Source: Oikopleura dioica (Eukaryota > Animalia > Chordata). From it: a DNA stretch of 64,000 nt. Shown piece after piece: positions 8,976 to 61,239 of the stretch (position 1 is the first letter of the stretch; each line of letters starts with the position of its first letter). Location: NCBI GenBank assembly GCA_907165135.1, contig OU015567.1, positions 3,534,001 to 3,598,000 on the forward strand, read 5' to 3'. The translations under genes and the position numbers were made by a program. A model generated the notes under the pieces. It was not told where the DNA came from and ran no database searches. It saw only the letters and a list, made by a program, of their open reading frames with translations.

Positions 8976-9896
8976 TTACTTGAGGTGTTCTCTGAAAATT
9001 CGGAAAAGCTCGATAAAGATCCAAGATTCTCTTGGAGGAGCAGAATCAGATGATGTCGTTGATGTTTTTGTTGTTGAGGTCGTTCTGGTTGTTGATTCTG
9101 CGGTTGTTATTGTTGTGGATTTTGTTGTTGTGGTTGATGTTGTTTTCTTTGTTGTTGTAGTGGTTCTTGTCGTCGTTGATGATGTCGTTGTTGTCGATGT
9201 AGTCGTTGTGGTACTTGTCGTTGTAGTAGTTGTAGTGGTTGTCGTCGTTGTCGTCGTTGTTGTAGACGTCGTAGTTGTCGTAGTGCTTGTTGTTGTTGTA
9301 GTAGTCGTAGTTGTCGTTGTTTTTGTTGTCAAAGTTGTTGTTGCGTTTGGGTACAAATGGGTGCATGTAGCATAGTGATCTTGACAGCAATCTTCAAAAA
9401 CGTTATAATTTTATCGGGCCAATAATAAATAAAAGCTTTCAGTTATTAAAGCTGACGCTCTTAAAGGTCGCTTGAATTCCATAGATATGCAATCATCGTT
9501 ATTACCGTCAAAAATAATGCATGATGAATCGCAAAAGCAATCTCTTCTTAAATCATCTCCTGCTGATGCTGTTTGTTGTTCACAAGGCTAGAAATAAATT
9601 AAAAAGAGTCCTTGATTTCAAAAACTTACGATTCCAAAACCAAGTAAAATTGGGTTGCATCCAAAGCATTCAATATCAACTCCATTGCAGCACTGCTGTT
9701 CCCTCCCCACTCCTCGTAACGCGCAACTGGATGAACTTTCTTTCCTTGCCAAATGAAAGGCCTTAGATTTGTTCAGTCTTTCTCTAATTATTCGTTTTGG
9801 CGTGAATGTCGAAGAGTATTTTTGCTGAATCGCTGCGATTTTTTGACCAAACGCGCTGGATATTAACAAAATCGGTAGCGTCAAAATATTTCTCAT
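8976..9896 (-). CDS. Secreted somatomedin-B (SBSPON-type Cys domain) plus Thr-rich mucin protein, paralogue 1 (oikosin-like)
   Basis: Signal MRNILTLPILLISSAFGQ; CALRGVGREQQCCNGVDIECFGC; spliced RDCFCDSSCIIFD|DCCQDHYATC; long poly-Thr tract; C-terminal ESWIFIELF. Confidence 0.75.
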
Positions 9897-14232: not shown

Positions 14233-15174
14233 TCAAAAATGTCGAGTTATGAAAAAATGATCTCTGTCAACTCGGCTTGGCATATTTCCCCACCTAATGT
14301 GATCCTTCACAAAATGGACCCACCCAAAAGGTAACGTTGTCATCCGGCTCCTGTTTCCGAATCGCATGTGCAGCGCTGTTCTCAGTAAGCCGAAAAGATT
14401 GTTGAAAATCCAAGACGTTTCCGTTGCTAAGTCGTCGATTGGACTCGGCGTTTTTGTTGGACCGGTAGAGCTGAACAAACGGTTTTTTATCTATATATAT
14501 ATCAGCGGTTTTTAGATTCGACGGAAAGAGCTATCGACGAAAGGCTTTCGTATCTTAGGGGTGATAACTCACACGCATCCTCCTCGACCACAATTAGTTG
14601 CTGGCTTGATAGGAGTAATAAGCTGAAAATCTGTTGTGTAGAGAGTTGAAGTCGTCGTTGTAGTTGAAGTTGTTGGGGTTGAGGTCGTCGTTGTGGTTGT
14701 CGTTGTGATCGTCGTCGAGGTCGTCGTTGAGGTTGTCGTCGAGGTTGTCGTCGAGGTTGTCGTTGAGGTTGTCGTCGTTGTTGTTGTTGTAGTCGTAGAT
14801 GAAGTGGCAAGAAAGGCTTCCAGTACTGCAAGCTGATCCTCGTTATAAAGCCGTCTGCATGTTATATAGTGGTCCTTACAGCAATCACCATAGTCAATGC
14901 ACTCTGCGTCGCAGTAACAGTCTCTTTCGTCATTAGCGGAAAGCTCCAAACCGTTGACACCGAACGGAGCTTTTGGCTGATCGACACAGGGTATTCCCTG
15001 GGCAACGAGGTCAGGGTGACAGCCATAGCAATCTTCTGAAAATCCGTCGCAGCATGCATTTGTTATTCCGCCTTTGGGTCGCTCATAACACTTCGAGTTT
15101 CCCTTCGATTTTCCGATATTTGATTCTTGCGAAAAAACTGAAGAAAAAGACAGAAATATTAAATTTCTCATCAT
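14233..15174 (-). CDS. Secreted somatomedin-B plus Thr-rich mucin protein, paralogue 2 (oikosin-like)
   Basis: Signal MMRNLIFLSFSSVFSQ; CCDGFSEDCYGC...RDCYCDAECIDYGDCCKDHYITC (SMB pattern); poly-Thr tract; downstream exon ETSWIFNNLF resembles the end of paralogue 1. Confidence 0.8.
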
Positions 15175-16782: not shown

Positions 16783-19639
16783 ATGAAAATTTCAATTCAA
16801 CTGATTGCTGCTGCTTCTGCCACTCATTATCGAGCAGGCTCCTATGAATACAAGCAGAATGGGGCTACTCTTCAAGGTAAGAAAATTTTTCATCTGAGGA
16901 TTACCATTTTTTAGTTCGACGAACAATGGGTTGGCGACGCGGTTTTGCTGGCTACGGAAATGACGGATGTACAGAAGATCACGTGAACAATGAAATCATC
17001 AGGTAAAATTGATCCTTTTACTCCTCAGAACTGATTATTCTCTAGTGATCCGATGATCAACGAAGTTATATACGACTTCAACGGCAATGTCTTGATTGAC
17101 TTTCAGGAAGCTGGAACAGCAGGAACCTACATCGTCAGCGAAATCGAACAATCGCCCAAATTAGACCCGGGAGTTCACTACTGCTTTGGATCACAAACTG
17201 AGGAGTTTTCGATTAGCAAGCAGTTTATCCACAGAGCGTACGGTTGCTGTACGATCGAGATGAACGATGACGATGGGAATGTGTTCAAAGACGGTGACTA
17301 CCAGTTTCTGTCGAAAGTTTACGATTTGACCAATAATTCGCCCTCATTCAGGTAAAAATGAAAATTTTTTTCTAGACATCATTTTTCATTCTAGAATTCC
17401 TGCGATCTGGTACATCATGTTCGGCTGCCCCGACCAGCGACTCCACCTCAGCCCGATCGACGTTGACGGTGACAACATCAAGTGCCGTTGGGCGAATGAA
17501 GCCGAGGCGGCAAGAATGTCCCGCGATATCGGCAACTTTAACTCTTTCCAACTCGACGAGGAGAATTGCATCGTCACTTATCTTCCCGAAAACGACAACT
17601 TTGGCGCTGGAATCAAACCTCTAGCGATTCAAGTCGAGGATTTCGACGCGAATGGGGTGCTCCGATCTTCGATGCCAGCGCAGTTCATGGCTACAGTTTG
17701 GACGCCCGAAATGCCCGATCCAGGGGACAATGGTTCCACTGGCGGTGGAAAACTCTTTGCTGATACTGTCTTCGGAGCAATTCACGATGAAACTCTAGAG
17801 AATCATCAGTCACCTTCAACCTCTTCTTTCAAGCCGCCTCGTAGATGGCGTGCTCGAGGGCGGCGAAACACCGACTATCCAGCATACTGCTCCGGTCTTC
17901 CAACCTTCACCGGCGAAACCCCCACTGACGGAGACATAATCGAAGTTTTCAATGAAATCGATATTGATTTTTTCGCGATTTACACGCTTGATGATACAAC
18001 CAACTTCGACATGGACAGAATTGTCTTTTCCACGCCACCAGGAATGACCTGCACTGAGGTTGATAAGGTGACGGGACAGGCGACTTGCTCCTGGGAACCA
18101 ACAGATGCGCAGAGAGCGATTGGAGAGTTTGACTTGTGCGCGATAGCATACGATCCAATGAATAGAAATACTGATCAAGTTTGCGTCACGCTCAGACTCA
18201 ATCCTCCAACCACAACAACAACCACTACAACTTCAACAACTACCACCAGCACGACAACAACGACGACAACAACAACAACTACTACAACTACGACAACAAC
18301 CACGACTACAACGACAACTCTCGGAACAGGAATCGCAACCAACACCGGTGACATCAGCATTTTTACTCACGATTGGTTCAACGTTCCCACTATTTTCCCT
18401 GAATGCGATACAAAACACAACAATGATTCTACCCTCTCTACCTGGGAAACCGTTGAATCTGAGTGGATGCCTGCCGTTGGAACAGTCCATTGGATGCACT
18501 TGCGCAACAGCGAATCTCGAGATTCCGTTTGCGCTGACGTCTACGATGGGAGTATTGGTTTCGATATGTCGCGAACGGTCAGAACCTTGATTCCAACTTT
18601 TGCCGGGGTGAAATGCTTGAGATTCGAAAATGGAGAATGCACTAATGCTCAGGTTCGATATTGCTGCCCACCTGAAATTCCAACAACAACAACTACAACA
18701 ACCACAACGACAACTACTACTCTTGGAACGGGAGTGCAAACAAACACCGGCGACATCAGAATTTCCACCCACGATTGGTTCAACACCCCGACAATTTATC
18801 CTGAGTGCGATACTAGCCAAAACTACGACTATTACCTCTCAACCTGGGAAACAGTCGAGTCTGACTGGATCGAAGGAGGAAGCAGCTGGAAGTACTTGCT
18901 CAACAGCGATTCAAGAGATGAAGTTTGTGCTGATGTCTACGCTGGTGAAATTGGTTTTGATTCGTCGAGATTGACGGGAGATTTCATTCCAAGCTATGTT
19001 GGAGTCAGATGCTTGAGAGTTGTTGATGGAGAGTGTGTTGATGCTCTCATTCGTTACTGCTGCCCAGCTGAAATTCCAACAACAACAACAACCACCTCTA
19101 CAACTACGACTTCTACAACAACGACAACCACGACAACTACTACAACTACCACCTCGACAACATCAACAACGACAACAACAACCTCAACCACTACAACAAC
19201 AACCACGACAACAACAAGTCCTCGACCAAGAACTACCCTCACTTTCTGGCTCGACATTTTCGCCCCCAACTTCACGTCTCAAAATCTCACCGATTACGGT
19301 TGCACTGGTCGAGGCCTTCTAGAACCTTTCACCCGAAACGCTGGTCGCCCCGTCGACGCAGTAGATCTAGCGATCAATTCATGGAAGAAATGCAATCGTT
19401 GCTCCGTTGACGTTCTCTATCCATCTACTCTTCTAACAAAGGGTTGGGACTATCCCCTTCCTTTGAATGAGCAGTGCTTTAGCGATACGGACTTTGAAAA
19501 GGCAATTTGCGAATGCGACAAAGCATTTGCCAAGGCTCTTGAAATGATTGGCTCGCCAGCAGAAGAATATCAAAATTATGATGAAGGTCTTTGCAGCTCT
19601 TGCGGAGGATCTCTTATCGGTAAGAATGCGTATTTTTGA
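16783..19639 (+). CDS. Large secreted mosaic protein: THYRAGS N-terminus, cadherin-like segment, three Thr-mucin tracts, two WxxW/CILP-like Cys repeats and a C-terminal PLA2-like domain (oikosin-like)
   Basis: Signal MKISIQLIAAASA followed by THYRAGSY; small GT-AG introns; final 740-aa ORF with DVDGDNIKCRWA, duplicated THDWFN.PTI.PECD...CLR...C..A..RYCCP units, and NLTDYGC.GRG...PVDAVD...CECDKAFA. Confidence 0.85.
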
Positions 19640-23489: not shown

Positions 23490-24724
23490 TTAAAAAATTT
23501 GGTAAAAGAAGTTTCGGACTTTGTAGGCGGGAGCAGGGTCGTAGTGATTGTCGGCAACGTATGCTGAGAGAGTGCCGGTGGTTTTCGCTCTGCTCGAAGC
23601 GTAATTTCCCGACATTATGGTGGCGCCGTCGACACTTGCGACGTAGGAAAGTTGTCCGCTTCCACGATTGGTAACTTCTATAGTATAGGTGCTCCATTGA
23701 CCGTCAGTGCACGTAATTTCCGTAAATTCGTGATGATCATATCCTTCTGGATTATTTGTTGCAAAGTGCACTTTATTGCTACCGCTTGATCGGAAAAGTA
23801 CGAACGTTCGATCACCAGCTGCTCCGTAATCTTGGCCTGTACCAAGTCGAAGGATAGCCGTCCAAGCCCAGTTGATTGGGGCGCTATGGTCGCAGAAGAC
23901 CTCAGCTGACGCTTTGTAGGCCAGAGCAGCCGGGACGGTTGCGAGAAGATTATTTCGACTAGGTGCAATGGCGCAGCCATTAACGATGTTAAAGCAGTTT
24001 TCAACTCCGTCGCATGGATCGGGAACTTGCAAGCACGCGATATTTATATCAGCAAAAGTCTGATAGTAAAAATTGCGGACGAAATTCGTTGAGCCAGCCT
24101 TGTACCAGTCGTCAGAAACGAAAACTTTGAGATCGACAGATGTCACCAATCCATTTTTGTAAGAGTACATGCCTTGTTCGATAGGGTCACCATCAATGCT
24201 GACAACATATTCGAGAACCAAGTCTTCGAAAGAGCGATCGCTTTGTTTCACAAGAACAGTGTAGGTGTTCCACTAACCCTGAACGCAGACATGATCGCGG
24301 GCCTTATAATATTCGTCTGGAGCATTAAAAAAGAATAAAAACTGTTTTTTGTCAGGATATCGCCAGATTCCGAATGGTCGATCACCAACAGCTCCATAGC
24401 GACAGTCTCCAACGGTCACGTGTATGATATTTAAGAAGTCTCCTCCGTACATCAGGGGAAGTAAAGGCAAGCTATAGTCGCAATAAACGTCAGCAGAGAA
24501 TTTGTAGTTGAGAGCGGCGGGCACAGTTCCAACCAGATTGTTTCGAGAGGGCGCAAGGCTGCATCCGTCTACGAGGGTCTGACAATTGTCGAGGCCATCG
24601 CATGGATCTGTATCACATGGAGGAATTTCTTCGAGATAAAATGTCTTTATTAGCGTGTGGTCATCTAACTTGAGTATGCGGATTTTTCGGTCATTGAACT
24701 TTTCATGGCTGGTAATATTTATTT
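23490..24724 (-). CDS. Tandem-domain extracellular protein (LamG/concanavalin-like repeats); 5' end lost in the gap
   Basis: Repeated units DPCDG..NC...V.GC..APSRNNL..TVPAAL.YK.SA.V.CD, GDR.F, and V..NF.YQT. Confidence 0.6.
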
Positions 24725-25224
24725 NNNNNNNNNNNNNNNNNNNNNNNNNNNNNNNNNNNNNNNNNNNNNNNNNNNNNNNNNNNNNNNNNNNNNNNNNNNN
24801 NNNNNNNNNNNNNNNNNNNNNNNNNNNNNNNNNNNNNNNNNNNNNNNNNNNNNNNNNNNNNNNNNNNNNNNNNNNNNNNNNNNNNNNNNNNNNNNNNNNN
24901 NNNNNNNNNNNNNNNNNNNNNNNNNNNNNNNNNNNNNNNNNNNNNNNNNNNNNNNNNNNNNNNNNNNNNNNNNNNNNNNNNNNNNNNNNNNNNNNNNNNN
25001 NNNNNNNNNNNNNNNNNNNNNNNNNNNNNNNNNNNNNNNNNNNNNNNNNNNNNNNNNNNNNNNNNNNNNNNNNNNNNNNNNNNNNNNNNNNNNNNNNNNN
25101 NNNNNNNNNNNNNNNNNNNNNNNNNNNNNNNNNNNNNNNNNNNNNNNNNNNNNNNNNNNNNNNNNNNNNNNNNNNNNNNNNNNNNNNNNNNNNNNNNNNN
25201 NNNNNNNNNNNNNNNNNNNNNNNN
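24725..25224. other. Assembly gap (exactly 500 N)
   Basis: Run of 500 N. The round size suggests a scaffolding placeholder rather than an estimated gap length. Confidence 0.97.
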
Positions 25225-25265
25225 TCGAGGTAAAATTTTTGTCCTCATCGGAAAACTTTCATAAG

Positions 25266-27004: not shown

Positions 27005-27763
27005 TCATTTCTTATTGCAATTTTTTAATAAAAAAATTAAAAACTCAGAAAACCGTTCATAAGGGAAAAAAGAATTAGAAATATCTATTCGTTTCGAGAT
27101 ATCACCAAAATCCGAAAAAATAATCGGAAATGTTTCTTTTTGAATTCTGTCTCGATTCGCCAATCGACCGTGTAAATGTTTAGGATCATGATGGGATCCG
27201 GTAACAAATCGAACACCACTATGCCATGTATTGTCAGTAAAAATCGAGCCAGCTACTTCATCGGAAACTGAGAAGCCTGTGGAATTTTTATGCAGATTGA
27301 AAACAGGAACAAGTTTCTGGCGCGATTCAAATTTCTCACACTTGTAAAATTGGCAAGGACACCCGTTCAAACAGTGTTTCTGAAATGGACAGACTTCTCC
27401 GGCTCCCTTAGCTGATCTTGTCAGTTCGAAACACATTGATTCACATGGAGACACCGGATAAGTCCTTGTTGATTCCAAGACGAGCGTTTTCGAGCAAAGA
27501 TGACGGCAGACGTTTTGATCGTAAAACTGTTTCTTCTGGCAGCGGAGAAGATTGACTTCATTTTCTTCTCTTGTGAAATTAAGACCCGCAGTTTTTGCGT
27601 GCTCGATCATAGAAACCGATTCGGGAAGGGTAAACTCTTGAGTTTCATAGCACTGCTTCAACAAATGTCCACAGAAGTCCATTGTTGCTGTTCTAACGCA
27701 TATCTTATAGTTTCGATGACAAGTCGTCGTCAGAAAAGTTGTTACTCCGCGTGATCTCTCCAA
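27005..27763 (-). CDS. Cys-rich lineage-specific protein with a CP-x3-C-x2-GCPC-x2-Y-x-C motif
   Basis: 252-aa ORF containing VCPFQKHCLNGCPCQFYKCEK preceded by several CxxxC motifs. From recollection this resembles an expanded Oikopleura family. Confidence 0.55.
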   Translation of the reverse strand: MERSRGVTTFLTTTCHRNYKICVRTATMDFCGHLLKQCYETQEFTLPESVSMIEHAKTAGLNFTREENEVNLLRCQKKQFYDQNVCRHLCSKTLVLESTRTYPVSPCESMCFELTRSAKGAGEVCPFQKHCLNGCPCQFYKCEKFESRQKLVPVFNLHKNSTGFSVSDEVAGSIFTDNTWHSGVRFVTGSHHDPKHLHGRLANRDRIQKETFPIIFSDFGDISKRIDISNSFFPYERFSEFLIFLLKNCNKK

Positions 27764-27788
27764 GGAATACAGGCGTAATACAATTTTT

Positions 27789-28030
27789 GGAACTTCTTAC
27801 CCTTGGACGAGGAAAAAAAGGAACTGTTAAGGGTGGACGAGGAAAAAAAGGAACTTTTAAGCTTGGACGAGGAAAAAAAGGAACTGTTAAGCTTGGACGA
27901 GGAAAAAAAGGAACTGTTAAGAGTGGACAAGGAAAAAAAAGGAACTTTTAAGCTTGGACGAGTAAAAAAAGGAACTGTTAAGCTTGGACGAGGAAAAAAA
28001 GGAACTTTTAAGGGTGGACGAGGGAAAAAA
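27789..28030. repeat. 30-31-bp minisatellite, about 7-8 copies, at the host/cassette boundary
   Basis: Unit (C/G)TTGGACGAGGAAAAAAAGGAACT(G/T)TTAAG repeated head-to-tail. Confidence 0.92.
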
Positions 28031-28173
28031 GAAAATTTGAAATTGTGAATTTCGGGAGTTCATTAGAGAAATTCAAGGACCTGAAAGTGTACCTTGGAAA
28101 ATACAAGTGAAAAAATTCTAGGTTTTAAATGTCTCTGTTGGAAAATCCAAGAAGTGGAAAAAAAGGAAAAAAT

Positions 28174-28196
28174 GGGTTTTCTTAGGCCGGCAGGCC
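28174..28196 (-). promoter_or_regulatory. Recurrent GGCC-GG(N)A-GGCC motif, copy 1
   Basis: + strand GGGTTTTCTTAGGCCGGCAGGCC; on the - strand it is followed by a pyrimidine tract and an AG ~45 nt away. Confidence 0.55.
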
Positions 28197-29230: not shown

Positions 29231-31290
29231 CTAATCAAGGCGGTAATTTCTTTCCATTCGTTTTAAAAACGCGGGAATCTCATTTTCATCCTCTTTGCAT
29301 TTCTTGATTAAATTGGCCGCGTGTTTTTGATCTTCCGATGTTATAAAGCTGATTATCTCACAATTTTTTGTCTTGTTTGCCAGTCGTTCTATCCTATTCA
29401 ATATTTTCATTATGCTTGAGGAAATTCTAGTTACTGCTGGGTGTAGTGCATAAATTTTTTCGGAAAGTCAAAGTTGACAATTTTTTCTTCCTTGATTTCA
29501 AGACCTCGGCTGATTCCGTTCGTTGCAATGATGATGTTTTTTCGTTTTGTCTATTAATATTATTAAGAAACTGATTGTATATCCCTTTCTGCGTGATGAC
29601 CGCGGACAACTCTCATATTTTGTGGATATGTTCCTTAGGTGGGATTTGTTAACCTGTCACATTTTGTGCCGTCAAACCCTTATCTTATTCCATTCTCGCT
29701 TGCGGACATTGAAATGCTTTCTGATGATTTCACCGACAATCTGCCAATCGACGACCTTAATGATTCTGTCCGAGAAAAACCGGCTGAAAACGAATCCGCT
29801 GCGGTCATAGTCAAAGGCAGAATCATCCCTCTTCCGTATTCGATTCGTAAATTGGCAACCGAACTCAAGATGGTAACCACTTTTCTTCTCCACAAAATAT
29901 GAGAGTTGTCCGCGGTCATCACTTGAAAAGAGCCGACCCTATTTTAAATCCATTAGTTTCTTACGTGAATGTCTCGAAGTTTTCTTTCTCGATGTCGGTG
30001 ATTTTGTCCTCCGTGTATTGCCGTGGCATTGAATCCGTGAGTGACAAGTATCGTCTCGACTAAGTCCGCATTATATCTTGTGTTTGTTTGGATGAGGATC
30101 TGGTTGCCTCTGTTTTGATCACAAAGTTGAATTGTTCGATAGAGTTTATATTGCTGCTCTACATGTTCAAAGGTTTCTACTATTCAGATCAGGGCTGACA
30201 TTTGGATGATTCACTTACTTACTCACTTAGTTTCCGCCTTTTGCAATAAGACTGGGTTGTATTCTTTCGTACAGATATTCGACTTAAGAGTGTCGCAGCA
30301 TTGTCTTTTTTAATTGGTTACTCGAAAAATTATCTTTGAAGCCAGTGAGACATTTTTGCCAGCCCTGATTCGTAGATTTTGATTCTTTTTTTCACCAATC
30401 GACAAAAAGATATATTGTTCGTGTAGGAATCTTCTTGCTCGCTTCTGCAATTGAATGTCGAATGTTGAGGAGAAAATTGCTGTTGTTCTGGAATGACTAT
30501 TCTTCCGTAGATACCAGTTGATTTCGTCAAGACATCTGTCTAACCCGTCATTAATCATAAAGTTTGCATCATCCAGTATAAGAAATTGACATCTTTCTGC
30601 TGGGATTATCATTCTTGATAGTAAAGTTTTTATTTGACCCGGGGTGCCGATCACGATGTTGCATCCTTCATAGATTTGTCGCGCTGTTTCTTGAATACTT
30701 AATGCAGATTTTTATAATTTACTATTAATTGATATTATATCATACTCTTCTCCACCGCACGCGATAATTGGAACGATTCCGGTGTTTTCTCCACAAAACT
30801 TGAAGCAATCTGTATATAATCGGGAAGCAAGTTCTTTTGTTGGTGATACGATGATGCAGTCTATTTTTCCGCTCGGTCTTTTTTTTTGTTTTTCATCGTT
30901 GGTTGACTTTAAATAATTGATGATTGGAATCATCATTGCTGCGGTTTTTCCTGATCCCGTTTGTGCGGTGGCCATCAAATCTTTTCTCTCGCTTAATATT
31001 TTGATTGCGTACTGTTGTATTGGTGATGGCTTTGTGTACAACAGTTGTCGTATATTGATTTGCATTTCTGGACAGAGATGCATATCGTGAAATGTTGGTG
31101 TGTAGTACTTTTCCGCGACACATTTGATTTTTTTTTCATTGACATCATATTCTGTGACATTTACCGGGAGATTTTCGTTGATTGTGAGCTTTGTCATGCT
31201 TGCGGTTTGTGCGGGGTCTTTTTGCAACTTATTATGGTAAGTAGGTTTGTCAATCGTGCTTTTTACCTTTTGTTCCGAACCCACTGACAT
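29231..31290 (-). CDS. Vasa/PL10 (DDX4/DDX3)-family DEAD-box protein with degenerate catalytic motifs
   Basis: Q motif FHDMHLC...YTKPSPIQQYAI; motif I DLMATAQTGSGKTAA; Ia SPTKELA; GCNIVIGTPG; II LILDDAN; III FSST; ATAIHGG; V IATNGISRGLEI; VI HYTQQIERLA; C-terminal EIPAFLKRM*. Short introns; linker exon at 30190-30330 unresolved. Confidence 0.85.
29593..29922. mobile_element. 330-bp segment bounded by 34-bp perfect inverted repeats inside an intron of the Vasa-like gene (MITE-like or inversion)
   Basis: GTGATGACCGCGGACAACTCTCATATTTTGTGGA at 29593-29626 and its exact reverse complement at 29889-29922; no TSD seen. Confidence 0.65.
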
Positions 31291-31400
31291 GGGTCGGGAA
31301 TTATTCGTGGCCGACGCTATCAAAAGTCTATTCATCTGAATTATTAAAATAATTGTCATTTGTGATCTATCGCAATAATCTGCTGCAGCTAGCTAAACGT

Positions 31401-31423
31401 GGGTTTTCATAGGCCGGGAGGCC
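31401..31423 (-). promoter_or_regulatory. Recurrent GGCC motif, copy 2 (~110 nt upstream of the Vasa-like ATG)
   Basis: + strand GGGTTTTCATAGGCCGGGAGGCC. Confidence 0.55.
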
Positions 31424-35480: not shown

Positions 35481-35624
35481 TCATCTTCAATTTGGTTAAA
35501 AATGCCACAATAAAGTTTATCTACTTGGCAACAAGTTTTTACCTTATCGATGTAATTTTCACAGCTGTGTATTAACGCGGCTAATTTCTTATTTGTTTCA
35601 AACAGGTGTCCATATAATGCAGGA

Positions 35625-36651
35625 AGTCGTAGTCTGAAGTGAATGATAAGTATGGGCGTATGTAAGGTGGCGTGAGTTGTGCCGTGAGCAAGTTACGGTC
35701 ACTCTGTGCCTGATTTTTAAGGTCGGTGCACCATTCCGAAGCCCGGGGAGTATTCTCCCAACTTCCGTGGTAATCACCTCCCTGTGTTATATAAAAATCA
35801 TTGATACGTACTCCCTGAAGTGCTATTTTTCGATTCATATAAATTCGACGCGTCTCTTCTGTGAGTTGTTCGTAGCCTGAAATGAATGATAAGTATGGGC
35901 GCATGAAAGGTGGCGTGAGTTATGCCGCGAGCAATTTACGGTTACTCTGTGCCTGATTTTTAAGGTCGGTGCACCATTCCGAAGCCCGGGGAGTATTCTC
36001 CCAACTTCCGTGGTAATCACCTCCTTGTGTTATATAATAATCATTTGATACGTACTCCCTGAAGTGCTATTTGTCGATTCGTATAAATTCGACGCGTCTT
36101 TTTTGTGAGTTTTTTCGTAGCCTGAAATGAATGATAAGTATGGGCGCATGAAAGGTGGCGTGAGTTGTGCCGCGAGCAATTTACGGTTACTCTGTGCCTG
36201 ATTTTTAAGGTCGGTGCACCATTCCGAAGCCCGGGGAGTTTTCTCCCAACTTCCGTGGTAATCACCTCCCTGTGTTATATAAAATCATTGGATACGTACT
36301 CCCCGAAGTGCTATCTTATTGTTCGTTTAAATTCGACGCGTCTTTTTTGTGAATTGTTCGTAGCCTGAAATAGATGATTAGTATGGGCGTAGAAAGGTGG
36401 CGTGAGTTGTGCCGCGAGCAAGATACGGTTACTCTGTGCCTGATTTTTTAGGTCGGTGCACCATTCCGAAGCCCGGGGAGTATTCTCCCAACTTCCGTGG
36501 TAATCACCTCCCTGTGTTATATAAAAATCATTTGATACGTACTCCCTGAAGTGCTATCTTTGGCTCGTTTATATTTGACGTGTCTCTCCTGTGAGTTGCT
36601 GGTAGCCTGAAATGAATGATAAGTATGGCCGCATATAAGGTGGCGTGAGTT
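35625..36651. repeat. Tandem array 1 of ~243-bp units (about 4.2 copies)
   Basis: TAGCCTGAAAT anchor at 35873, 36118, 36361 and 36603 (spacings 245, 243, 242); conserved core GGTCGGTGCACCATTCCGAAGCCCGGGGAGT.TTCTCCCAACTTCCGTGGTAATCACC. Confidence 0.95.
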
Positions 36652-36979
36652 AGTAGTTTTCCCGAAAGATATTCTTCTATGATTTTTTCAAGGGTTTTCA
36701 CGACTCACCTAAGTGTTGGGAACCGCGTTGGACAAGCTGACACTCTGAACGAAGCGATCTGAGGCGAAGTGTTACTTTTGATCATCCTAACCCTTAATTC
36801 CCCTTTAATGCTATTAAGAACGCATGTGGGATGCCATTCTAAAAAAATTATATATCAGGCAGAGCTTTGAGATCCGATTATTCATGATGCATATTGAATG
36901 GCTTTTCAGTTATGCAGTTTCTTTTTACGGCGTCTTTCATGCGTCATTCTGAAACGTATATTATATTTCATTAAATTCG

Positions 36980-42154: not shown

Positions 42155-42177
42155 GGGTTTTCTTCGGCCGGCAGGCC
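42155..42177 (-). promoter_or_regulatory. Recurrent GGCC motif, copy 3
   Basis: + strand GGGTTTTCTTCGGCCGGCAGGCC. Confidence 0.55.
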
Positions 42178-48385: not shown

Positions 48386-48404
48386 TTTTCTTCGGCCGGA
48401 GGCC
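48386..48404 (-). promoter_or_regulatory. Recurrent GGCC motif, copy 4 (~40 nt upstream of ATG 48345, with poly-T/AG acceptor between)
   Basis: + strand TTTTCTTCGGCCGGAGGCC; - strand continues GTGACTGATTTTTTTTTTTAG|GTTATAC...ATG. Confidence 0.55.
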
Positions 48405-51998: not shown

Positions 51999-54900
51999 TT
52001 ATAGTCTTGCTTTCAGGCTTGTTCCAAACATGCATCGTAGAAAGCCGGAAATAATTTGTAATTGTTCTTCGCTGTACTGCCATTTCTTTATATGGGCAAT
52101 AAATCGCAAATTGGCCATCGTTGGAGGATAATTATGGCTCGCTTCTTTTAATGAGCGGGCGATTTCTTCTATTTTGCCTTAAAGTGAAAGATTACTTGTC
52201 TGGCTTGTATTCTGAACTTTACACTGTAAATGATTACCTGGTGTCAATGTTTCGAGGCCGACATCTTCAAGCCTGATTGGTTTTCCGCAGGCAATACATT
52301 CTGACATGATTTCCGTCACTCTAGCTAGTGAGATATGCTCCTTCAATGCAATTTGATTGAGCGTTTCTCCGTCCAGGTATCGTTTGTAGATTATCCAACT
52401 GCGCAACCGCAAGTATTTGCCCGCTTAATTTAATAATACTCATTGCGTTGAAATGGTCATACGTTTTTTTTCTGCCCATGTCTGCTCTGGGTTGGTAATC
52501 ATCGCATATGTAACGTCTTCTTCTTCGTACATATCTTTATTGACTTCCAGTTCCGGGTATTGTGCTTTATACTTAGCCGTCCATATGTAAAAACTTCGGT
52601 ACATTTTCGCCGCGGCTACCGTCATTCGTGGAATTTTACACACTTAATAAAAGTTATATTAATGTATGTGTTTCTTGCTACTTGATTCTTCTGTTGTCGG
52701 TCGCCACAGTATCACTCGCTCCAAAAGTTCTCTACTGAAGGGAAATGTTGGTGTTTTAGATTTCGCATATTCCCGCGTCAGTTTTTCCATGATGGAGTAC
52801 ATCATCTTTCTATAACTTTCTTCGTACACATCTTCTTTCGGTTTTTCCTTTTGTTGAGTTTGCGCAATTTCAACTCCGTCGAACACTGCGAGCTCTTGTT
52901 CATCCTTCAGTTTAATCTCTGATTTCGGATCAATCAGAAAATCACGTTCTCCTTTCGAAACCACTCGGACTGCCTTCATATCTGTTGTGAGCACTTCAAA
53001 TATCACGATTAAGGGTTTTTTTCTACTTTAATGATTTCTACCTGTAATGAAGGGTTCTGATGCATTCCTCATGAAACTAAATCCGCGATCCGATACGACC
53101 ATCCTTACCGATCCTTCGCCTTTATAATCGGCGAGATTAAGGTAATCGCCGAGGATGAGGGCTCTCGCCACCGCATAGTAATGAGCTTTCTACAAAATCG
53201 TTAATTATCATTTCCTATCATCTTACTGTTTTGTTGGTAGATTTTTTCAACGCTCGTGCCAGAACATTGGTAAAATTTGATTTTCTATCGCATTCAATAA
53301 CTGCTTCCATAACGATAAGTGCTTCGTTCCGAATGCTAACGTAATGCTTCAGTTCTGCCTTGTAGTCTTTTTAGGGATTTATGAGTTGATTATGTTAACT
53401 GGATCTCAGAAACAGAAAATGTCCTCATTATCCTTTCTTTGTTTCGTGCATATTCTTCATTTTCCCTGAAGCAATGATCGCAACAATGTGGGAGACCGGT
53501 TATCTCCGATTCCTCATCTCGGTTGAAAACGTGAAGCAAGACCTCTCGAAGACATCCTCGTCGCTTTAAAGCATATTCCGCGTGAAGAAGTTCCAGATAC
53601 TTTTGGATCTTATTTTCCAAAAGCGGCTCTTTGGTTGCTGTCTGCCGGTGGAATGGGGTGAGCTTTTTGTCAACAAAGATAGTAGCCGAGGCTTGGTCTC
53701 CGTTTCGTCCGCATCGTCCGCTCATTTGTGAAAGTGCCGAGAGAGATAATGGCGTTCCCCATATTACTAAAAAGTATTTTCATGTCTATATCTCTATAAT
53801 CTTACCTGTCTTCCGCAATGTTCGGTCGTCGTGGCCCATGCCGAAAGCCACTGTGGCAATTATTGCATCGAGTTTGCCTTCGGTGAAATCTTTCACTGTT
53901 TTCCGCCTTTGCTTTTCTTCGTTTACCCACGGCTTTGTTTTATCCTCGTTCTTTTTGATTCTAGATGTTCTATTTAGGTTTTTCAGATGCAAAATCTAAG
54001 AATTACCCGAAATATTTTCCTATCCTCCGCATATCGAAAAATCTTCCAAGGTTTTCGAATAGGAATTCGCCTTCTGACTTCACATTGATGTAAATAAGAA
54101 CTCGCTCCTTGAATCGATACAGTTGTCTGTCGCTTAATTCGTTTAATTTAATTATTTCATGAATTACTTACTGTACGACCTCGCCGAGTTCGAGAAAATT
54201 GGCCCTCCTTAAATCGGTGAACAATGCTTCCGCCGAAGCATGCTTCGTATCGCTTTTCTTGTTGGTTTTATTGAGTATTCTGTACGTGATATTTTTCCGG
54301 TCTGTTGTTCCTTTGATCAGCTTTGCCTATATATCATTTTAACGTGTAAAGAAATAAGTAATGACTACCGTTTTCATTCGAAGAATTTTTCTTATCCCCT
54401 TTTCTACGTGTTGTGTCGCAGTGGCTGTGCACGCAAGGAAAGGTACATTTGAGATGTCTTTGGCAAAACCGAGAAATTTCATTTCTGCTCGAAAGGAACT
54501 CCACTCAACACTCGTATGGACTAGAACAGTGTTATAATTTGATTGCTTTTTGTTTTTATTACTTTCGTCGAAAATAACCGCGTTTAGGGGATTTACGGCG
54601 TTAAGCATCTGCAGTACAAGATGGTTTTTGTTCAGACTTTCGGGAGATGCAAAAAGGACGCGGTAGTTCTGGAGTCGTGTTTTTTCCTTCCTTGCCGCCC
54701 ATTCAAGAAAGTCCGTGTCCTTCAATTTGGTATTGCTGATGCCGGCATTATCCAGAAAAGCCATTAAGTCCGCACGAATATTATTAACAGGGAGCACTAT
54801 AAGAGTGTAACCCTTTTCTTGAAGTGCCGCGTAGGTGAGAAATACAGCCGATTTTCCGCTACCAGTGCTCATAACTAGAAGCACATCCTTCCCGTCCAAC

Positions 54901-55079
54901 ATTGTACTGATCGCGTCATATTGCCAAGGTTTGAGGTTTTTGTGTCCGATTATCTCCTTGAATTTTCGTTTGACAGTTATGTATCGTTCTTCGTTTGATA
55001 ACGATTCGTTGCGGTAATTGATTTTTGCGGTATTGCTTCGATTCGACTCATTAACCCCATTTTCGTTCATTCTGAACAT
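51999..55079 (-). CDS. WRN-like RecQ helicase (helicase core, RQC Zn and winged helix, HRDC, C-terminal HTH); no exonuclease domain seen
   Basis: LKPWQ, TGSGKS, ASPE, spliced FDE|IH, ACTATAT, TDRKNITY, IATVAFGMG, spliced RKT|VIWGTP...QMSGRCGRNG, CLREVLLHVF...CCDHC, HYYAVARALILGDYL (RQC), FSRELLERVILWRPTTEE (HRDC), YLDGETLNQIA...ECIACGKPI (WRN-type HTH). Possible frameshift near 52130. Confidence 0.88.
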
Positions 55080-58310: not shown

Positions 58311-58332
58311 GGGTTTTTGTCGGCCGGAGGCC
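58311..58332 (-). promoter_or_regulatory. Recurrent GGCC motif, copy 5
   Basis: + strand GGGTTTTTGTCGGCCGGAGGCC; - strand continues TCTTTCGTTTTTTTTTATTAAG|GTT. Confidence 0.55.
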
Positions 58333-59431: not shown

Positions 59432-59538
59432 TCTAAATGATATTGAAAGTATTATGCTTTGTGAAAGTTAGTCTCCATAGGTGTAAATCTTGGTTCGTTA
59501 TGTTCGACGTGTTTGGTAGGTTTATCGTTTCCTAAAAC

Positions 59539-61070
59539 GAATGATTAGTTTTAGCGCATGTAAAATGGCGTGAGTTGTGCCGCAAGCAACTTACGGTTTC
59601 TCTGTGCCTGAATTTAAAGGTCGGTGCACCATTCCGAAGCCCTGGGAGTATTTTCCCAACTTCCGTGGTAATCACCTTCCTGTCTTATTTAAAAACCATT
59701 TGATACGTACTCCCTGGAGTGCTTTCTCCTTGTTCGTTTAAATTCGACGCGTCGTTTTGGTGAGATGGTAGTTGCCTGAAAGGAATGATTAGTTTGAGCG
59801 CATATAAAATGGCGTGAGTTGTGCCGCAAGCAAGTTACGGTTTCTCTGTGCCTGAATTTAAAGGTCGGTGCACCATTCCGAAGCCCTGGGAGTATTTTCC
59901 CAACTTCCGTGGTAATCACCTTCCTGTCTTATTTAAAAACCATTTGATACGTACTCCCTGGAGTGCTTTCTCATTGTTCGTTTAAATTCGACGCGTCGTT
60001 TTGGTGAGATGGTAGTTGCCTGAAAGGAATGATTAGTTTGAGCGCATATAAAATGGCGTGAGTTGTGCCGCAAGCAAGTTACGGTTACTCTGTGCCTGGA
60101 GTTAAAGGTCGGTGCACCATTCCGAAGCCCGGGGAGTATTTTCCCAACTTCCGTGGTAATCACCTTCCTGTTTTATACAAATACCATTTGATACGTACTC
60201 CCTGGAGTGTTTTTTTTTTGTTCGTTCAAATTCGACGCGTCGTTTTGGTGAGATGGTCGTTGCCTGAAAGGAATGATAAGTATGGGCGCATGAAAGGTGG
60301 CGTGAGTTGTGCCGCAAGCAAGTTACGGTTACTCAGTGCCTGAATTTAAAGGTCGGTGCACCATTCCGAAGCCCGGGGAGTATTTTCCCAACTTCCGTGG
60401 TAATCATCTTCCTGTCTTATTTAAAAATTATTCGATACGTACTCCCTGGAGTGTTTTTTTTGTTCGTTCAAATTCGACGCGTCGTTTGGTGAGATGGTCG
60501 TTGCCTGAAAGGAATGATAAGTATGGGCGCATGAAAGGTGGCGTGAGTTATGGTATGAGCAAGTAACGGTAACTCTGTGCCTGAATTTAAAGGTCGGTGC
60601 ACCATTCCGAAGCCCGGGGAGTATTTTCCCAACTTCCGTGGTAATCGCCTTCCTGTCTTATTTAAAAACCATTTGATACGTACTCCCTGGAGTGCTTTCT
60701 TCTTTTTCGTTTAAATTCGACGCGTCGTTTTGGTGAGATGGTAGTTGCCTTAAAGAGATGATAAGTATGGGCGCATGAAAGTTGGCGTGAGTTGTGCCGC
60801 AAGCAAGTTACGGTTACTCTGTGCCTGAATTTAAAGGTCGGTGCACCATTCCGAAGCCCGGGGAGTATTTTCCCAACTTCCGTGGTAATCACCTCCCTGT
60901 CTTATTTAAAAATTATTCGATACGTACTCCCTGGAGTTCTTTCTTCTTGTTCATTTAACTTCGACGCGTCGTTTTGGTGAGATGGTCGTTGCCTGAAAGG
61001 AATGATAAGTATGGGCGCATGAAAGGTGGCGTGAGTTATGGTATGAGCAAGTAACGGTAACTCTGTGCCT
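59539..61070. repeat. Tandem array 2 of ~244-bp units (about 6.3 copies), homologous to array 1, same orientation
   Basis: GCCTGAAAG anchor at 59774, 60018, 60262, 60503, 60747 (variant GCCTTAAAG) and 60991 (spacings 244, 244, 241, 244, 244). Confidence 0.95.
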
Positions 61071-61239
61071 CAATTTCCCTTCTGTATTTTAGATAATTAG
61101 CTTGATTTGTACTCACTTGAGTTTGATTCTTTCGTCTTGTTTTCATACTATGCGACATCAGTGAGTGGCATGTTTCTTAAAAAGTACGTTTATTCACTGT
61201 TTTTGAGAGGTTTGCCTGATAAAAGTTTGACGGCGCAAG

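What the first reader, a model, noticed from the sequence alone, without database searches (positions are those of the whole stretch)
29231..31290. Vasa/PL10-family pseudo-helicase: fold kept, catalytic motifs broken
The Q motif and Walker A (AQTGSGKT) are retained, but DEAD reads DDAN, SAT reads SST and HRIGRTGR reads QQIERLA, while both RecA domains and the Vasa-like C-terminus stay in frame across introns. These motifs are needed for ATP hydrolysis and unwinding in DEAD-box proteins, and Vasa acts in piRNA amplification. Inference: a catalytically dead decoy that could bind ATP or partners and jam germline piRNA/nuage defence, i.e. an element-encoded anti-silencing factor.
Basis: partly seen in the sequence, partly recalled or inferred. 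Interest (0 to 1): 0.8.

Follow-up and report, generated by a model that had tools for sequence, protein, structure and literature searches.

The report
Fast-evolving, motif-degenerate Vasa-like host gene
This is an ordinary chromosomal gene of a larvacean-type marine animal, a fast-evolving tail-less copy of the germline helicase Vasa whose ATP-binding motifs survive but whose hydrolysis motifs have drifted; nothing shows it belongs to a mobile element, and one stretch in its middle leaves open whether the present copy is still intact.

Summary
The observation largely holds. On the minus strand (29231-31359) lies a DEAD-box-type gene with an intact Q motif and Walker A. Motif II reads DDAN, motif III reads SST, and motifs V and VI are degenerate.

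Its nearest relatives are the Vasa/DDX4-like proteins of Oikopleura dioica, at 44-56% identity. Three introns sit at the same place and phase as in that gene. The window copy lacks the Gly/Arg-rich N-tail and the Gly-rich C-tail.

Its branch is about twice as long as the O. dioica branch. Even so, about 480 homologous codons carry no stop or frameshift, where neutral decay would predict 11-21 stops. The motif drift therefore happened under coding constraint.

One weak point remains. The roughly 0.2-kb stretch between the two RecA blocks is absent from relatives and holds four in-frame stops. No single GT..AG span bridges it; only non-canonical G[ACG]..AG spans or two-intron models do. The copy is therefore either spliced through a lineage-specific intron or newly disabled.

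The "element-encoded anti-silencing decoy" reading has no support. About 60 ORFs show no transposon or virus domain, no terminal repeats flank the gene, its neighbours are cellular genes, and it shares an upstream motif with four other places in the window.

The parts
29231..31359 (-). Whole Vasa-like gene, from the first ATG of the exon-1 ORF to the stop codon. The predicted product is about 460-480 aa if the inter-domain stretch is removed by splicing.
30394..31182 (-). RecA1 (DEAD-domain) coding block homologous to O. dioica Vasa-like proteins. It carries the Q motif, Walker A, Ia, GG and Ib, with motif II reading DDAN and motif III reading SST. It contains shared intron 1.
30698..30745 (-). 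Intron 1: 48 nt, GT..AG, phase 2, at the same place and phase as in the O. dioica gene.
29231..30183 (-). RecA2 (Helicase_C) coding block, with motifs IV, V and VI degenerate and a short C-terminus. It contains shared introns 3 and 4.
29551..29964 (-). Intron 3: 414 nt, GT..AG, phase 0, at the same place and phase as in the O. dioica gene. It is enlarged by a nested inverted-repeat element.
29593..29922 (.). 330-bp element with perfect 34-nt terminal inverted repeats, lying wholly inside intron 3. It looks like a MITE, but no target duplication was seen and there is no second copy in the window.
29394..29434 (-). Intron 4: 41 nt, GT..AG, phase 2. It splits the codon that corresponds to the first Arg of motif VI, as in the O. 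dioica gene.
31412..31423 (-). GC-rich upstream motif about 50 nt 5' of the first ATG. The same ~25-nt motif occurs at four other places in the window; one of these lies about 50 nt upstream of an ORF start.

Best explanation
This is a nuclear host gene of a larvacean-type (Oikopleura-like) animal. It is a duplicated or fast-evolving copy of the Vasa/DDX4-like helicase that has lost both disordered tails. It keeps the nucleotide-binding half of the active site (Q motif, Walker A, Ia, GG). The residues that hydrolyse ATP and couple hydrolysis to RNA release have drifted (motifs II, III, V and VI).

Shown: family membership of the fold, shared intron positions, accelerated divergence, and exon blocks kept open.

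Inferred: the product binds ATP and probably RNA but turns over slowly or not at all. It would then act as a long-lived RNA clamp or partner-binding regulator of Vasa-type complexes, as engineered hydrolysis-dead DDX3/Vasa proteins do.

Whether today's allele still makes that protein depends on whether the inter-domain stretch is spliced out as a lineage-specific, non-canonical intron.
For: Pfam DEAD matches both halves of RecA1, and Helicase_C matches RecA2. The best PDB hits are planarian vasa-like DjVLGB, DDX3X and Vasa.

The closest proteins among 15 billion are the exon-1 fragments P0001 and P0002, at 53-56%. Their gene family falls in one 90% cluster with O. dioica CBY18436.1, CBY34458.1 and CBY31843.1. 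Those proteins in turn hit Vasa/DDX4 of other animals best.

Three introns are shared in place and phase.

The window branch measures 0.56 aa changes per site against 0.26 for O. dioica. About 480 homologous codons have no stop or frameshift, where neutral decay predicts 11-21 stops (P of none is at most 1e-5). pN is 0.36 with pS saturated.

All three shared introns keep GT..AG. An upstream motif is shared with four other places in the window.

O. dioica is reported to have four vas genes, so duplication in this lineage is known (PMC5830320). Hydrolysis-dead Belle/DDX3 stays bound to target mRNA and acts dominantly (PMC6573787).

Eight frame-keeping G[ACG]..AG spans exist across the inter-domain stretch, and one of them restores exactly the 12-residue spacing of the relatives. 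GV/AG introns are a recognised larvacean class (PMC13326754).
Against: The inter-domain stretch has four in-frame stops and is absent from all relatives. No single canonical GT..AG span bridges it. The other four introns checked in this window are all GT..AG and, apart from the one enlarged by the nested element, 41-48 nt long.

There is no transcript evidence. No identical or near-identical ORF is on record anywhere.

E-to-D in motif II is conservative, so loss of hydrolysis is inferred, not shown. Because the species is unidentified, it is unknown whether a canonical copy coexists.
Confidence: 0.55

Rival explanations
1. Young pseudogene. A diverged Vasa paralogue that was functional until recently has been disabled by an insertion of about 186 nt into the coding sequence between the two RecA domains. 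It now makes no full-length protein.
For: The stretch has four in-frame stops, relatives lack it, and no single GT..AG span keeps the frame. A 10-nt inverted repeat brackets most of the stretch, which hints at a small transposon. A MITE-like element has also landed in the neighbouring intron. RecA2 is the most eroded part, at 33-40% identity, and PDB sequences do not recognise the last exon. No expressed or annotated counterpart was found.
Against: The exon blocks carry no stop or frameshift despite a branch about twice as long as that of O. dioica. All three shared introns keep their splice dinucleotides. The extra length is a multiple of three, and non-canonical G[ACG]..AG spans, a class known in larvaceans, would keep the frame. 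No second copy of the inserted stretch was found in the window, so its transposon nature is unproven.
Confidence: 0.3
2. Still-active helicase. Despite unusual motifs (D for E in motif II, S for A in motif III), the protein hydrolyses ATP and remodels RNA like a normal, if odd, DEAD-box enzyme.
For: The Q motif, Walker A, Ia and GG are intact. The motif II and III changes are chemically mild. The frame is kept under selection.
Against: Changes are stacked in four motifs at once: the last Asp of motif II, motif V, two of the three arginines of motif VI, and the Arg of motif Ib. RecA2 also evolves fastest. From established DEAD-box knowledge, the motif VI arginines and the motif II/III contact are needed for RNA-stimulated hydrolysis.
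Confidence: 0.1
3. One reading: a gene carried by a mobile or virus-like element that acts as a decoy against germline piRNA silencing.
For: Only indirect. The protein family works in nuage in other animals (general knowledge), and two small inverted-repeat stretches lie inside the gene.
Against: About 60 ORFs across the window show no transposase, integrase, reverse-transcriptase, capsid or packaging domain. The only virus-named Pfam matches are far below their cut-offs (E 0.01-0.09) and lie at unrelated places. No long terminal or inverted repeats flank the gene. Its introns are shared with the host Vasa-like gene. The neighbours are cellular genes, and its upstream motif recurs at four other places in the window. 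It is single-copy in the window.
Confidence: 0.03

Closest known systems
Oikopleura dioica Vasa/DDX4-like helicase (CBY18436.1 = P0278, 962 aa; CBY34458.1; CBY31843.1)
   Same: It is the closest relative found, at 54% identity in exon 1 and 44% over 390 aligned residues. It shares a lineage signature around Walker A, three intron positions and phases, and the VPxFL-like patch.
   Different: The O. dioica protein has a ~480-aa Gly/Arg-rich N-tail, a Gly-rich C-tail ending in acidic-Trp, and intact DEAD, SAT, motif V and HRIGRTAR. It reads straight through where the window has its extra stretch. The window copy has none of these features and evolves about twice as fast.
Solved Vasa/PL10 cores: DjVLGB (1wrb), DDX3X (5e7i and others), Drosophila Vasa (2db3), Bombyx Vasa (4d25)
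   Same: These are the best PDB sequence matches for four of the five blocks, covering the RecA1 and RecA2 layout and the flanking N-terminal strand typical of this subfamily.
   Different: All of them have canonical motifs II, III, V and VI. The window's last exon is not recognised by any PDB sequence.
Engineered hydrolysis-dead DDX3/Vasa proteins (Belle E460Q/E460A, K345N)
   Same: These are the model for how it might work. Such proteins stay bound to target mRNA and act dominantly over the wild-type protein (PMC6573787).
   Different: They are single laboratory substitutions in a full-length protein with its disordered tails. Here the changes are natural and spread over four motifs, the motif II Glu is replaced by Asp rather than Gln or Ala, and the tails are gone. 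In that paper the N-tail was needed for Belle's function.
Non-canonical and transposon-derived introns of larvaceans
   Same: Larvacean genomes use GV/AG and other non-GT/AG introns, and introner transposons with weak splice sites have been proposed (PMC13326754). The inter-domain stretch can be bridged only by G[ACG]..AG spans, and a 10-nt inverted repeat brackets most of it.
   Different: Nothing shows the stretch is spliced. It lacks the YAY signature described for the AG/AC and AG/AT classes. The other introns checked in this window are plain GT..AG.

Membership tests
DEAD-box helicase (SF2, DDX) | Two RecA-like domains (Pfam DEAD + Helicase_C) | tested here: met
   DEAD matches at 8.6e-18 and 4e-8. 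Helicase_C matches at 1e-4 (22.9 bits against a 23.5-bit cut-off) on one exon alone. All five blocks align to O. dioica relatives.
DEAD-box helicase (SF2, DDX) | Q motif and motif I (AxTGSGKT) | tested here: met
   Both are present and align column for column with DjVLGB and DDX3X.
DEAD-box helicase (SF2, DDX) | Motif II reads D-E-A-D | tested here: not met
   It reads DDAN, while the relatives read DEAD.
DEAD-box helicase (SF2, DDX) | Motif III reads S-A-T | tested here: not met
   It reads SST, while the relatives read SAT.
DEAD-box helicase (SF2, DDX) | Motif VI H-R-I-G-R-x-G-R with three arginines | tested here: not met
   Only the middle Arg is kept, and three residues are inserted after the His. 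O. dioica has HRIGRTAR.
Vasa/DDX4 subfamily | Closest relatives are Vasa/DDX4 rather than other DDX clades | tested here: met
   The nearest proteins are O. dioica Vasa-like, whose own best named hits are Vasa/DDX4. The best PDB hits are vasa-like, DDX3X and Vasa. DDX4 and DDX3 are not cleanly separated by these scores.
Vasa/DDX4 subfamily | Disordered Gly/Arg-rich (or zinc-knuckle) N-terminal region and a conserved acidic-Trp C-terminal end | tested here: not met
   Only about 60-85 residues precede the core, none of them Gly/Arg-rich. The upstream motif and what looks like the 3' end of the next gene upstream leave no room for such an exon. The C-terminus ends about 10 residues after the VPxFL-like patch.
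Vasa/DDX4 subfamily | Germline or nuage expression | not testable with these tools
   No transcript data are held for this species. No matching ORF appears in the (meta)transcriptome-derived protein sets.
Gene of a transposable or virus-like element | Hallmark genes and terminal repeats around the gene; multiple copies | tested here: not met
   About 60 ORFs show no hallmark domain. No flanking long repeats were found. The gene is single-copy in the window. Copy number in the whole genome could not be tested.
Processed (retro-)pseudogene | Loss of the parent gene's introns | tested here: not met
   Three parental intron positions are retained.
Decayed unprocessed pseudogene | Stops and frameshifts scattered through the exons | tested here: not met
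   None occur in about 480 homologous codons, against 11-21 expected. All four in-frame stops lie in the one stretch that relatives lack.
Lineage-specific non-canonical (GV/AG) or transposon-derived intron | Removed from the transcript; a frame-keeping span with accepted termini | tested here: inconclusive
   Eight G[ACG]..AG spans keep the frame and no GT..AG span does. Removal from RNA cannot be tested here.

The most novel reading that the evidence does not exclude
A naturally selected, hydrolysis-impaired, tail-less Vasa paralogue: a natural counterpart of the laboratory 'locked clamp' mutants, kept by selection in a larvacean germline toolkit. On this reading its two RecA domains are separated by a young intron, born from a small inverted-repeat insertion and spliced at non-canonical ends.
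Probability: 0.25. Interest if true: 0.6.

Novelty: new variant of a known kind. Interest (0 to 1): 0.3.

Why it matters
If the copy is expressed, it would be a rare natural case of a Vasa-family protein kept by selection after losing the hydrolysis and coupling motifs. That would be useful for asking what a DEAD-box core does when it can bind but not let go. It would also help explain why larvaceans, with several vas genes, diversify this germline factor. Its middle stretch would be a compact test case for how small insertions become introns in genomes with relaxed splice-site rules. If the copy is not expressed, it is simply a young pseudogene of a fast-evolving paralogue. In neither case does it bear on transposon counter-defence.

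Tried and rejected
**Look-ups and searches that came back blank**
- Exact look-ups of the exon-1 ORF from four possible start codons, and of the 740-aa neighbour ORF, found nothing on record.
- A word search with the RecQ1-like exon, meant to place the species, found nothing at E <= 1e-8.
- Rfam and tRNA scans of the window were empty.
- A tblastx synteny check between the O. dioica-type loci and the window found nothing outside the helicase.

**Leads that led nowhere**
- The two large proteins high in the big search (P0007, P0008) are tandem-domain predictions of canonical DEAD-box genes, not relatives with degenerate motifs.
- I saw no target-site duplication at the 34-nt inverted-repeat element on reading its flanks. 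No second copy of that element or of the inter-domain stretch turned up in the window or the fetched loci.
- A single canonical GT..AG intron across the inter-domain stretch does not exist.
- The bacterial-type promoter and terminator scan is uninformative for a eukaryote.

**Identity of the window**
- That the window is the O. dioica reference genome is judged unlikely. O. dioica exon-1 ORFs of the canonical gene are on record many times, but nothing above 56% matches this one.

There was therefore no full-length family scan, no structure prediction and no fold search; every search used single exon blocks by reference.
- The viral-contig collection was not scanned, and no animal-virus record was fetched.

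Full report
**What is there.** The finding's interval holds a gene on the minus strand, 29231-31359. I searched five stop-free blocks one by one, by reference.
- The exon-1 ORF (30715-31359, 215 aa) matches Pfam DEAD positions 1-85 at 8.6e-18. It carries the Q motif and AQTGSGKT.
- The next block (30313-30711) matches DEAD positions 85-163 at 4e-8. It reads DDAN where the family has DEAD, and SST where it has SAT.
- The block at 29979-30183 matches Helicase_C at 1e-4, just under the cut-off.
- In the Protein Data Bank the best matches are the planarian vasa-like DjVLGB, DDX3X, and fly and silkworm Vasa.
- The last exon is too diverged for any PDB sequence. It aligns only to the Oikopleura relatives.
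- Motif VI keeps one of its three arginines and has three residues inserted after the His.

**Relatives and source.**
- The word search with exon 1 found two anonymous marine-metagenome ORFs at 53-56% identity, P0001 and P0002. They share a derived signature around Walker A.
- The exhaustive search of 1.84 billion representatives found nothing closer. Only two proteins scored below 1e-30, and one of them is a tandem-domain artefact.
- The contigs behind these ORFs (L001-L006, L009) encode a canonical helicase with DEAD, SAT, an intact motif V, HRIGRTAR, a long Gly/Arg-rich N-tail and a Gly-rich C-tail.
- That gene falls in one 90% cluster with Oikopleura dioica CBY18436.1, CBY34458.1 and CBY31843.1. 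Its best named hits outside larvaceans are Vasa/DDX4, at 44-47%.
- The window gene therefore belongs to the larvacean Vasa-like clade.
- The window itself is probably not the O. dioica reference. No identical or near-identical exon-1 ORF is on record, although the canonical O. dioica exon 1 is recorded many times, and a RecQ exon search was blank.
- The contig is not human, and nothing in it resembles an animal virus above noise.

**Gene structure.**
- Three introns sit at the same place and phase as in the O. dioica gene. This was checked against genomic L001, the spliced metatranscript L005 and the annotated P0278. They are 30698-30745 (48 nt, phase 2), 29551-29964 (414 nt, phase 0) and 29394-29434 (41 nt, phase 2). 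All three are GT..AG.
- The 414-nt intron is long because it holds a 330-bp element with perfect 34-nt terminal inverted repeats, at 29593-29922. This element does not touch coding sequence.
- A RecQ1-like neighbour has a 42-nt GT..AG intron that restores a DE-x-H box, so 41-48 nt is the usual intron size here.
- The product would lack both disordered tails. About 60-85 residues precede the core, and the upstream motif together with what looks like the 3' end of the next gene upstream leaves no room for a Gly/Arg-rich exon.

**The weak point.**
- Between the RecA1 block (ending 30394) and the RecA2 block (starting 30183) the window has 62 codons more than the relatives, which read straight through. 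The stretch holds four in-frame stops.
- No single GT..AG span keeps the frame. Eight G[ACG]..AG spans do, and one of them leaves exactly the 12 residues seen in O. dioica. Ten two-span GT..AG models also keep the frame.
- GV/AG introns are a recognised class in larvacean genomes, and transposon-born introns with weak sites have been proposed there (PMC13326754).
- A 10-nt inverted repeat brackets most of the stretch, but no second copy was found.
- By the rule I was given, an intron must be predicted by a tool or shared by relatives.
- I give only the number of stops. Searches are raw print-outs in which the stretch can be read residue by residue, and I make no use of where the stops lie.

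**Selection.**
- Against six outgroup Vasa/DDX4 proteins the window blocks average 35% identity, while the matching O. dioica segments average 47%. The gap is widest in RecA2.
- Three-taxon branch lengths are 0.56 for the window and 0.26 for O. dioica.
- Synonymous sites are saturated, and pN is 0.36.
- Of single-base changes to the window's codons, 5.6% give a stop. If the whole branch were neutral, about 21 stops would be expected in about 480 codons. If only the excess over the O. dioica branch were neutral, about 11 would be expected (P of none is 1e-5). None is seen, and there are no frameshifts.
- The motif changes therefore arose while the frame was under selection. This is not an old, decayed pseudogene.

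**Context.**
- About 60 ORFs across the window were scanned against Pfam. The hits include sulfotransferase, RecQ plus its zinc-binding domain, and weaker, sub-cut-off matches to somatomedin B and mucin-like Thr-rich domains.
- No transposase, integrase, reverse transcriptase or capsid turned up. The few virus-named matches have E 0.01-0.09, lie far below their cut-offs and sit at unrelated places.
- No long repeats flank the gene.
- A ~25-nt GC-rich motif lies about 50 nt upstream of its first ATG and at four other places in the window, five sites against 0.08 expected. At one of those places it again lies about 50 nt upstream of an ORF start.
- The gene behaves like its neighbours, so 'element-encoded' is not supported.

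**How it most likely works.**
- Shown: a Vasa-type fold, intact nucleotide-binding motifs, degenerate motifs II, III, V and VI, no tails, and a constrained frame.
- Inferred from established DEAD-box knowledge and from Belle mutants that bind mRNA without releasing it and act dominantly (PMC6573787): the protein binds ATP and RNA but hydrolyses poorly, acting as a clamp or regulator.
- O. dioica has four vas genes (PMC5830320), so paralogue specialisation is plausible.
- I put 0.55 on this reading, 0.30 on a young pseudogene disabled by the inter-domain insertion, 0.10 on a still-active enzyme and 0.03 on the element-decoy idea.

There was therefore no structure prediction, fold search or full-length family scan. 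The viral collection was not scanned.

Noticed in passing
window 29593-29922: A 330-bp element with perfect 34-nt terminal inverted repeats lies inside intron 3 of the helicase gene. It has no evident target duplication, no second copy in the window, and an 87-codon ORF on the plus strand with no Pfam match.
   Followed up: partly
window 28185-28196, 31412-31423, 42166-42177, 48394-48404, 58322-58332: A GC-rich motif (GGCC, 1-3 bases, CCGGCC, then an A-run and CCC on the minus strand; about 25 nt conserved) occurs five times, against 0.08 expected. At two of the sites it lies about 50 nt upstream of a minus-strand ORF start. It may be a promoter-proximal element.
   Followed up: partly
window 35614-36690 and 59512-61076: Two arrays of a ~244-bp tandem repeat lie in the same orientation about 23 kb apart, with copies 60-96% alike.
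   Followed up: no
window 53390-55079 (minus strand): A RecQ1-like helicase gene. A 42-nt in-frame GT..AG intron interrupts its DE-x-H box, and the box is normal once the intron is read as such. The zinc-binding domain lies in a downstream exon.
   Followed up: partly
window 8976-9390, 14569-15174, 17417-19639: Thr-rich mucin-like ORFs. One has a somatomedin-B match, and a 740-aa ORF has internal ~400-nt repeats and a weak phospholipase-A2-like end. They may be secreted matrix ('house'-type) proteins if the source is a larvacean.
   Followed up: no
window 27753-28071: An array of eight listed copies of a repeat at ~30-nt spacing, open in several frames, next to a 252-aa Cys-rich ORF (27005-27763) with no family match.
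   Followed up: no
window 24703-25230 approx.: An assembly gap (run of N), so the window comes from a scaffolded draft assembly.
   Followed up: no
L005 (Ga0206687_1412300) and L003: L005 is an intron-free, spliced copy of the O. dioica-type Vasa-like gene, i.e. a metatranscriptome contig. L003 shows the same gene next to a ubiquitin-hydrolase-like ORF. Neither shows synteny with the window.
   Followed up: partly
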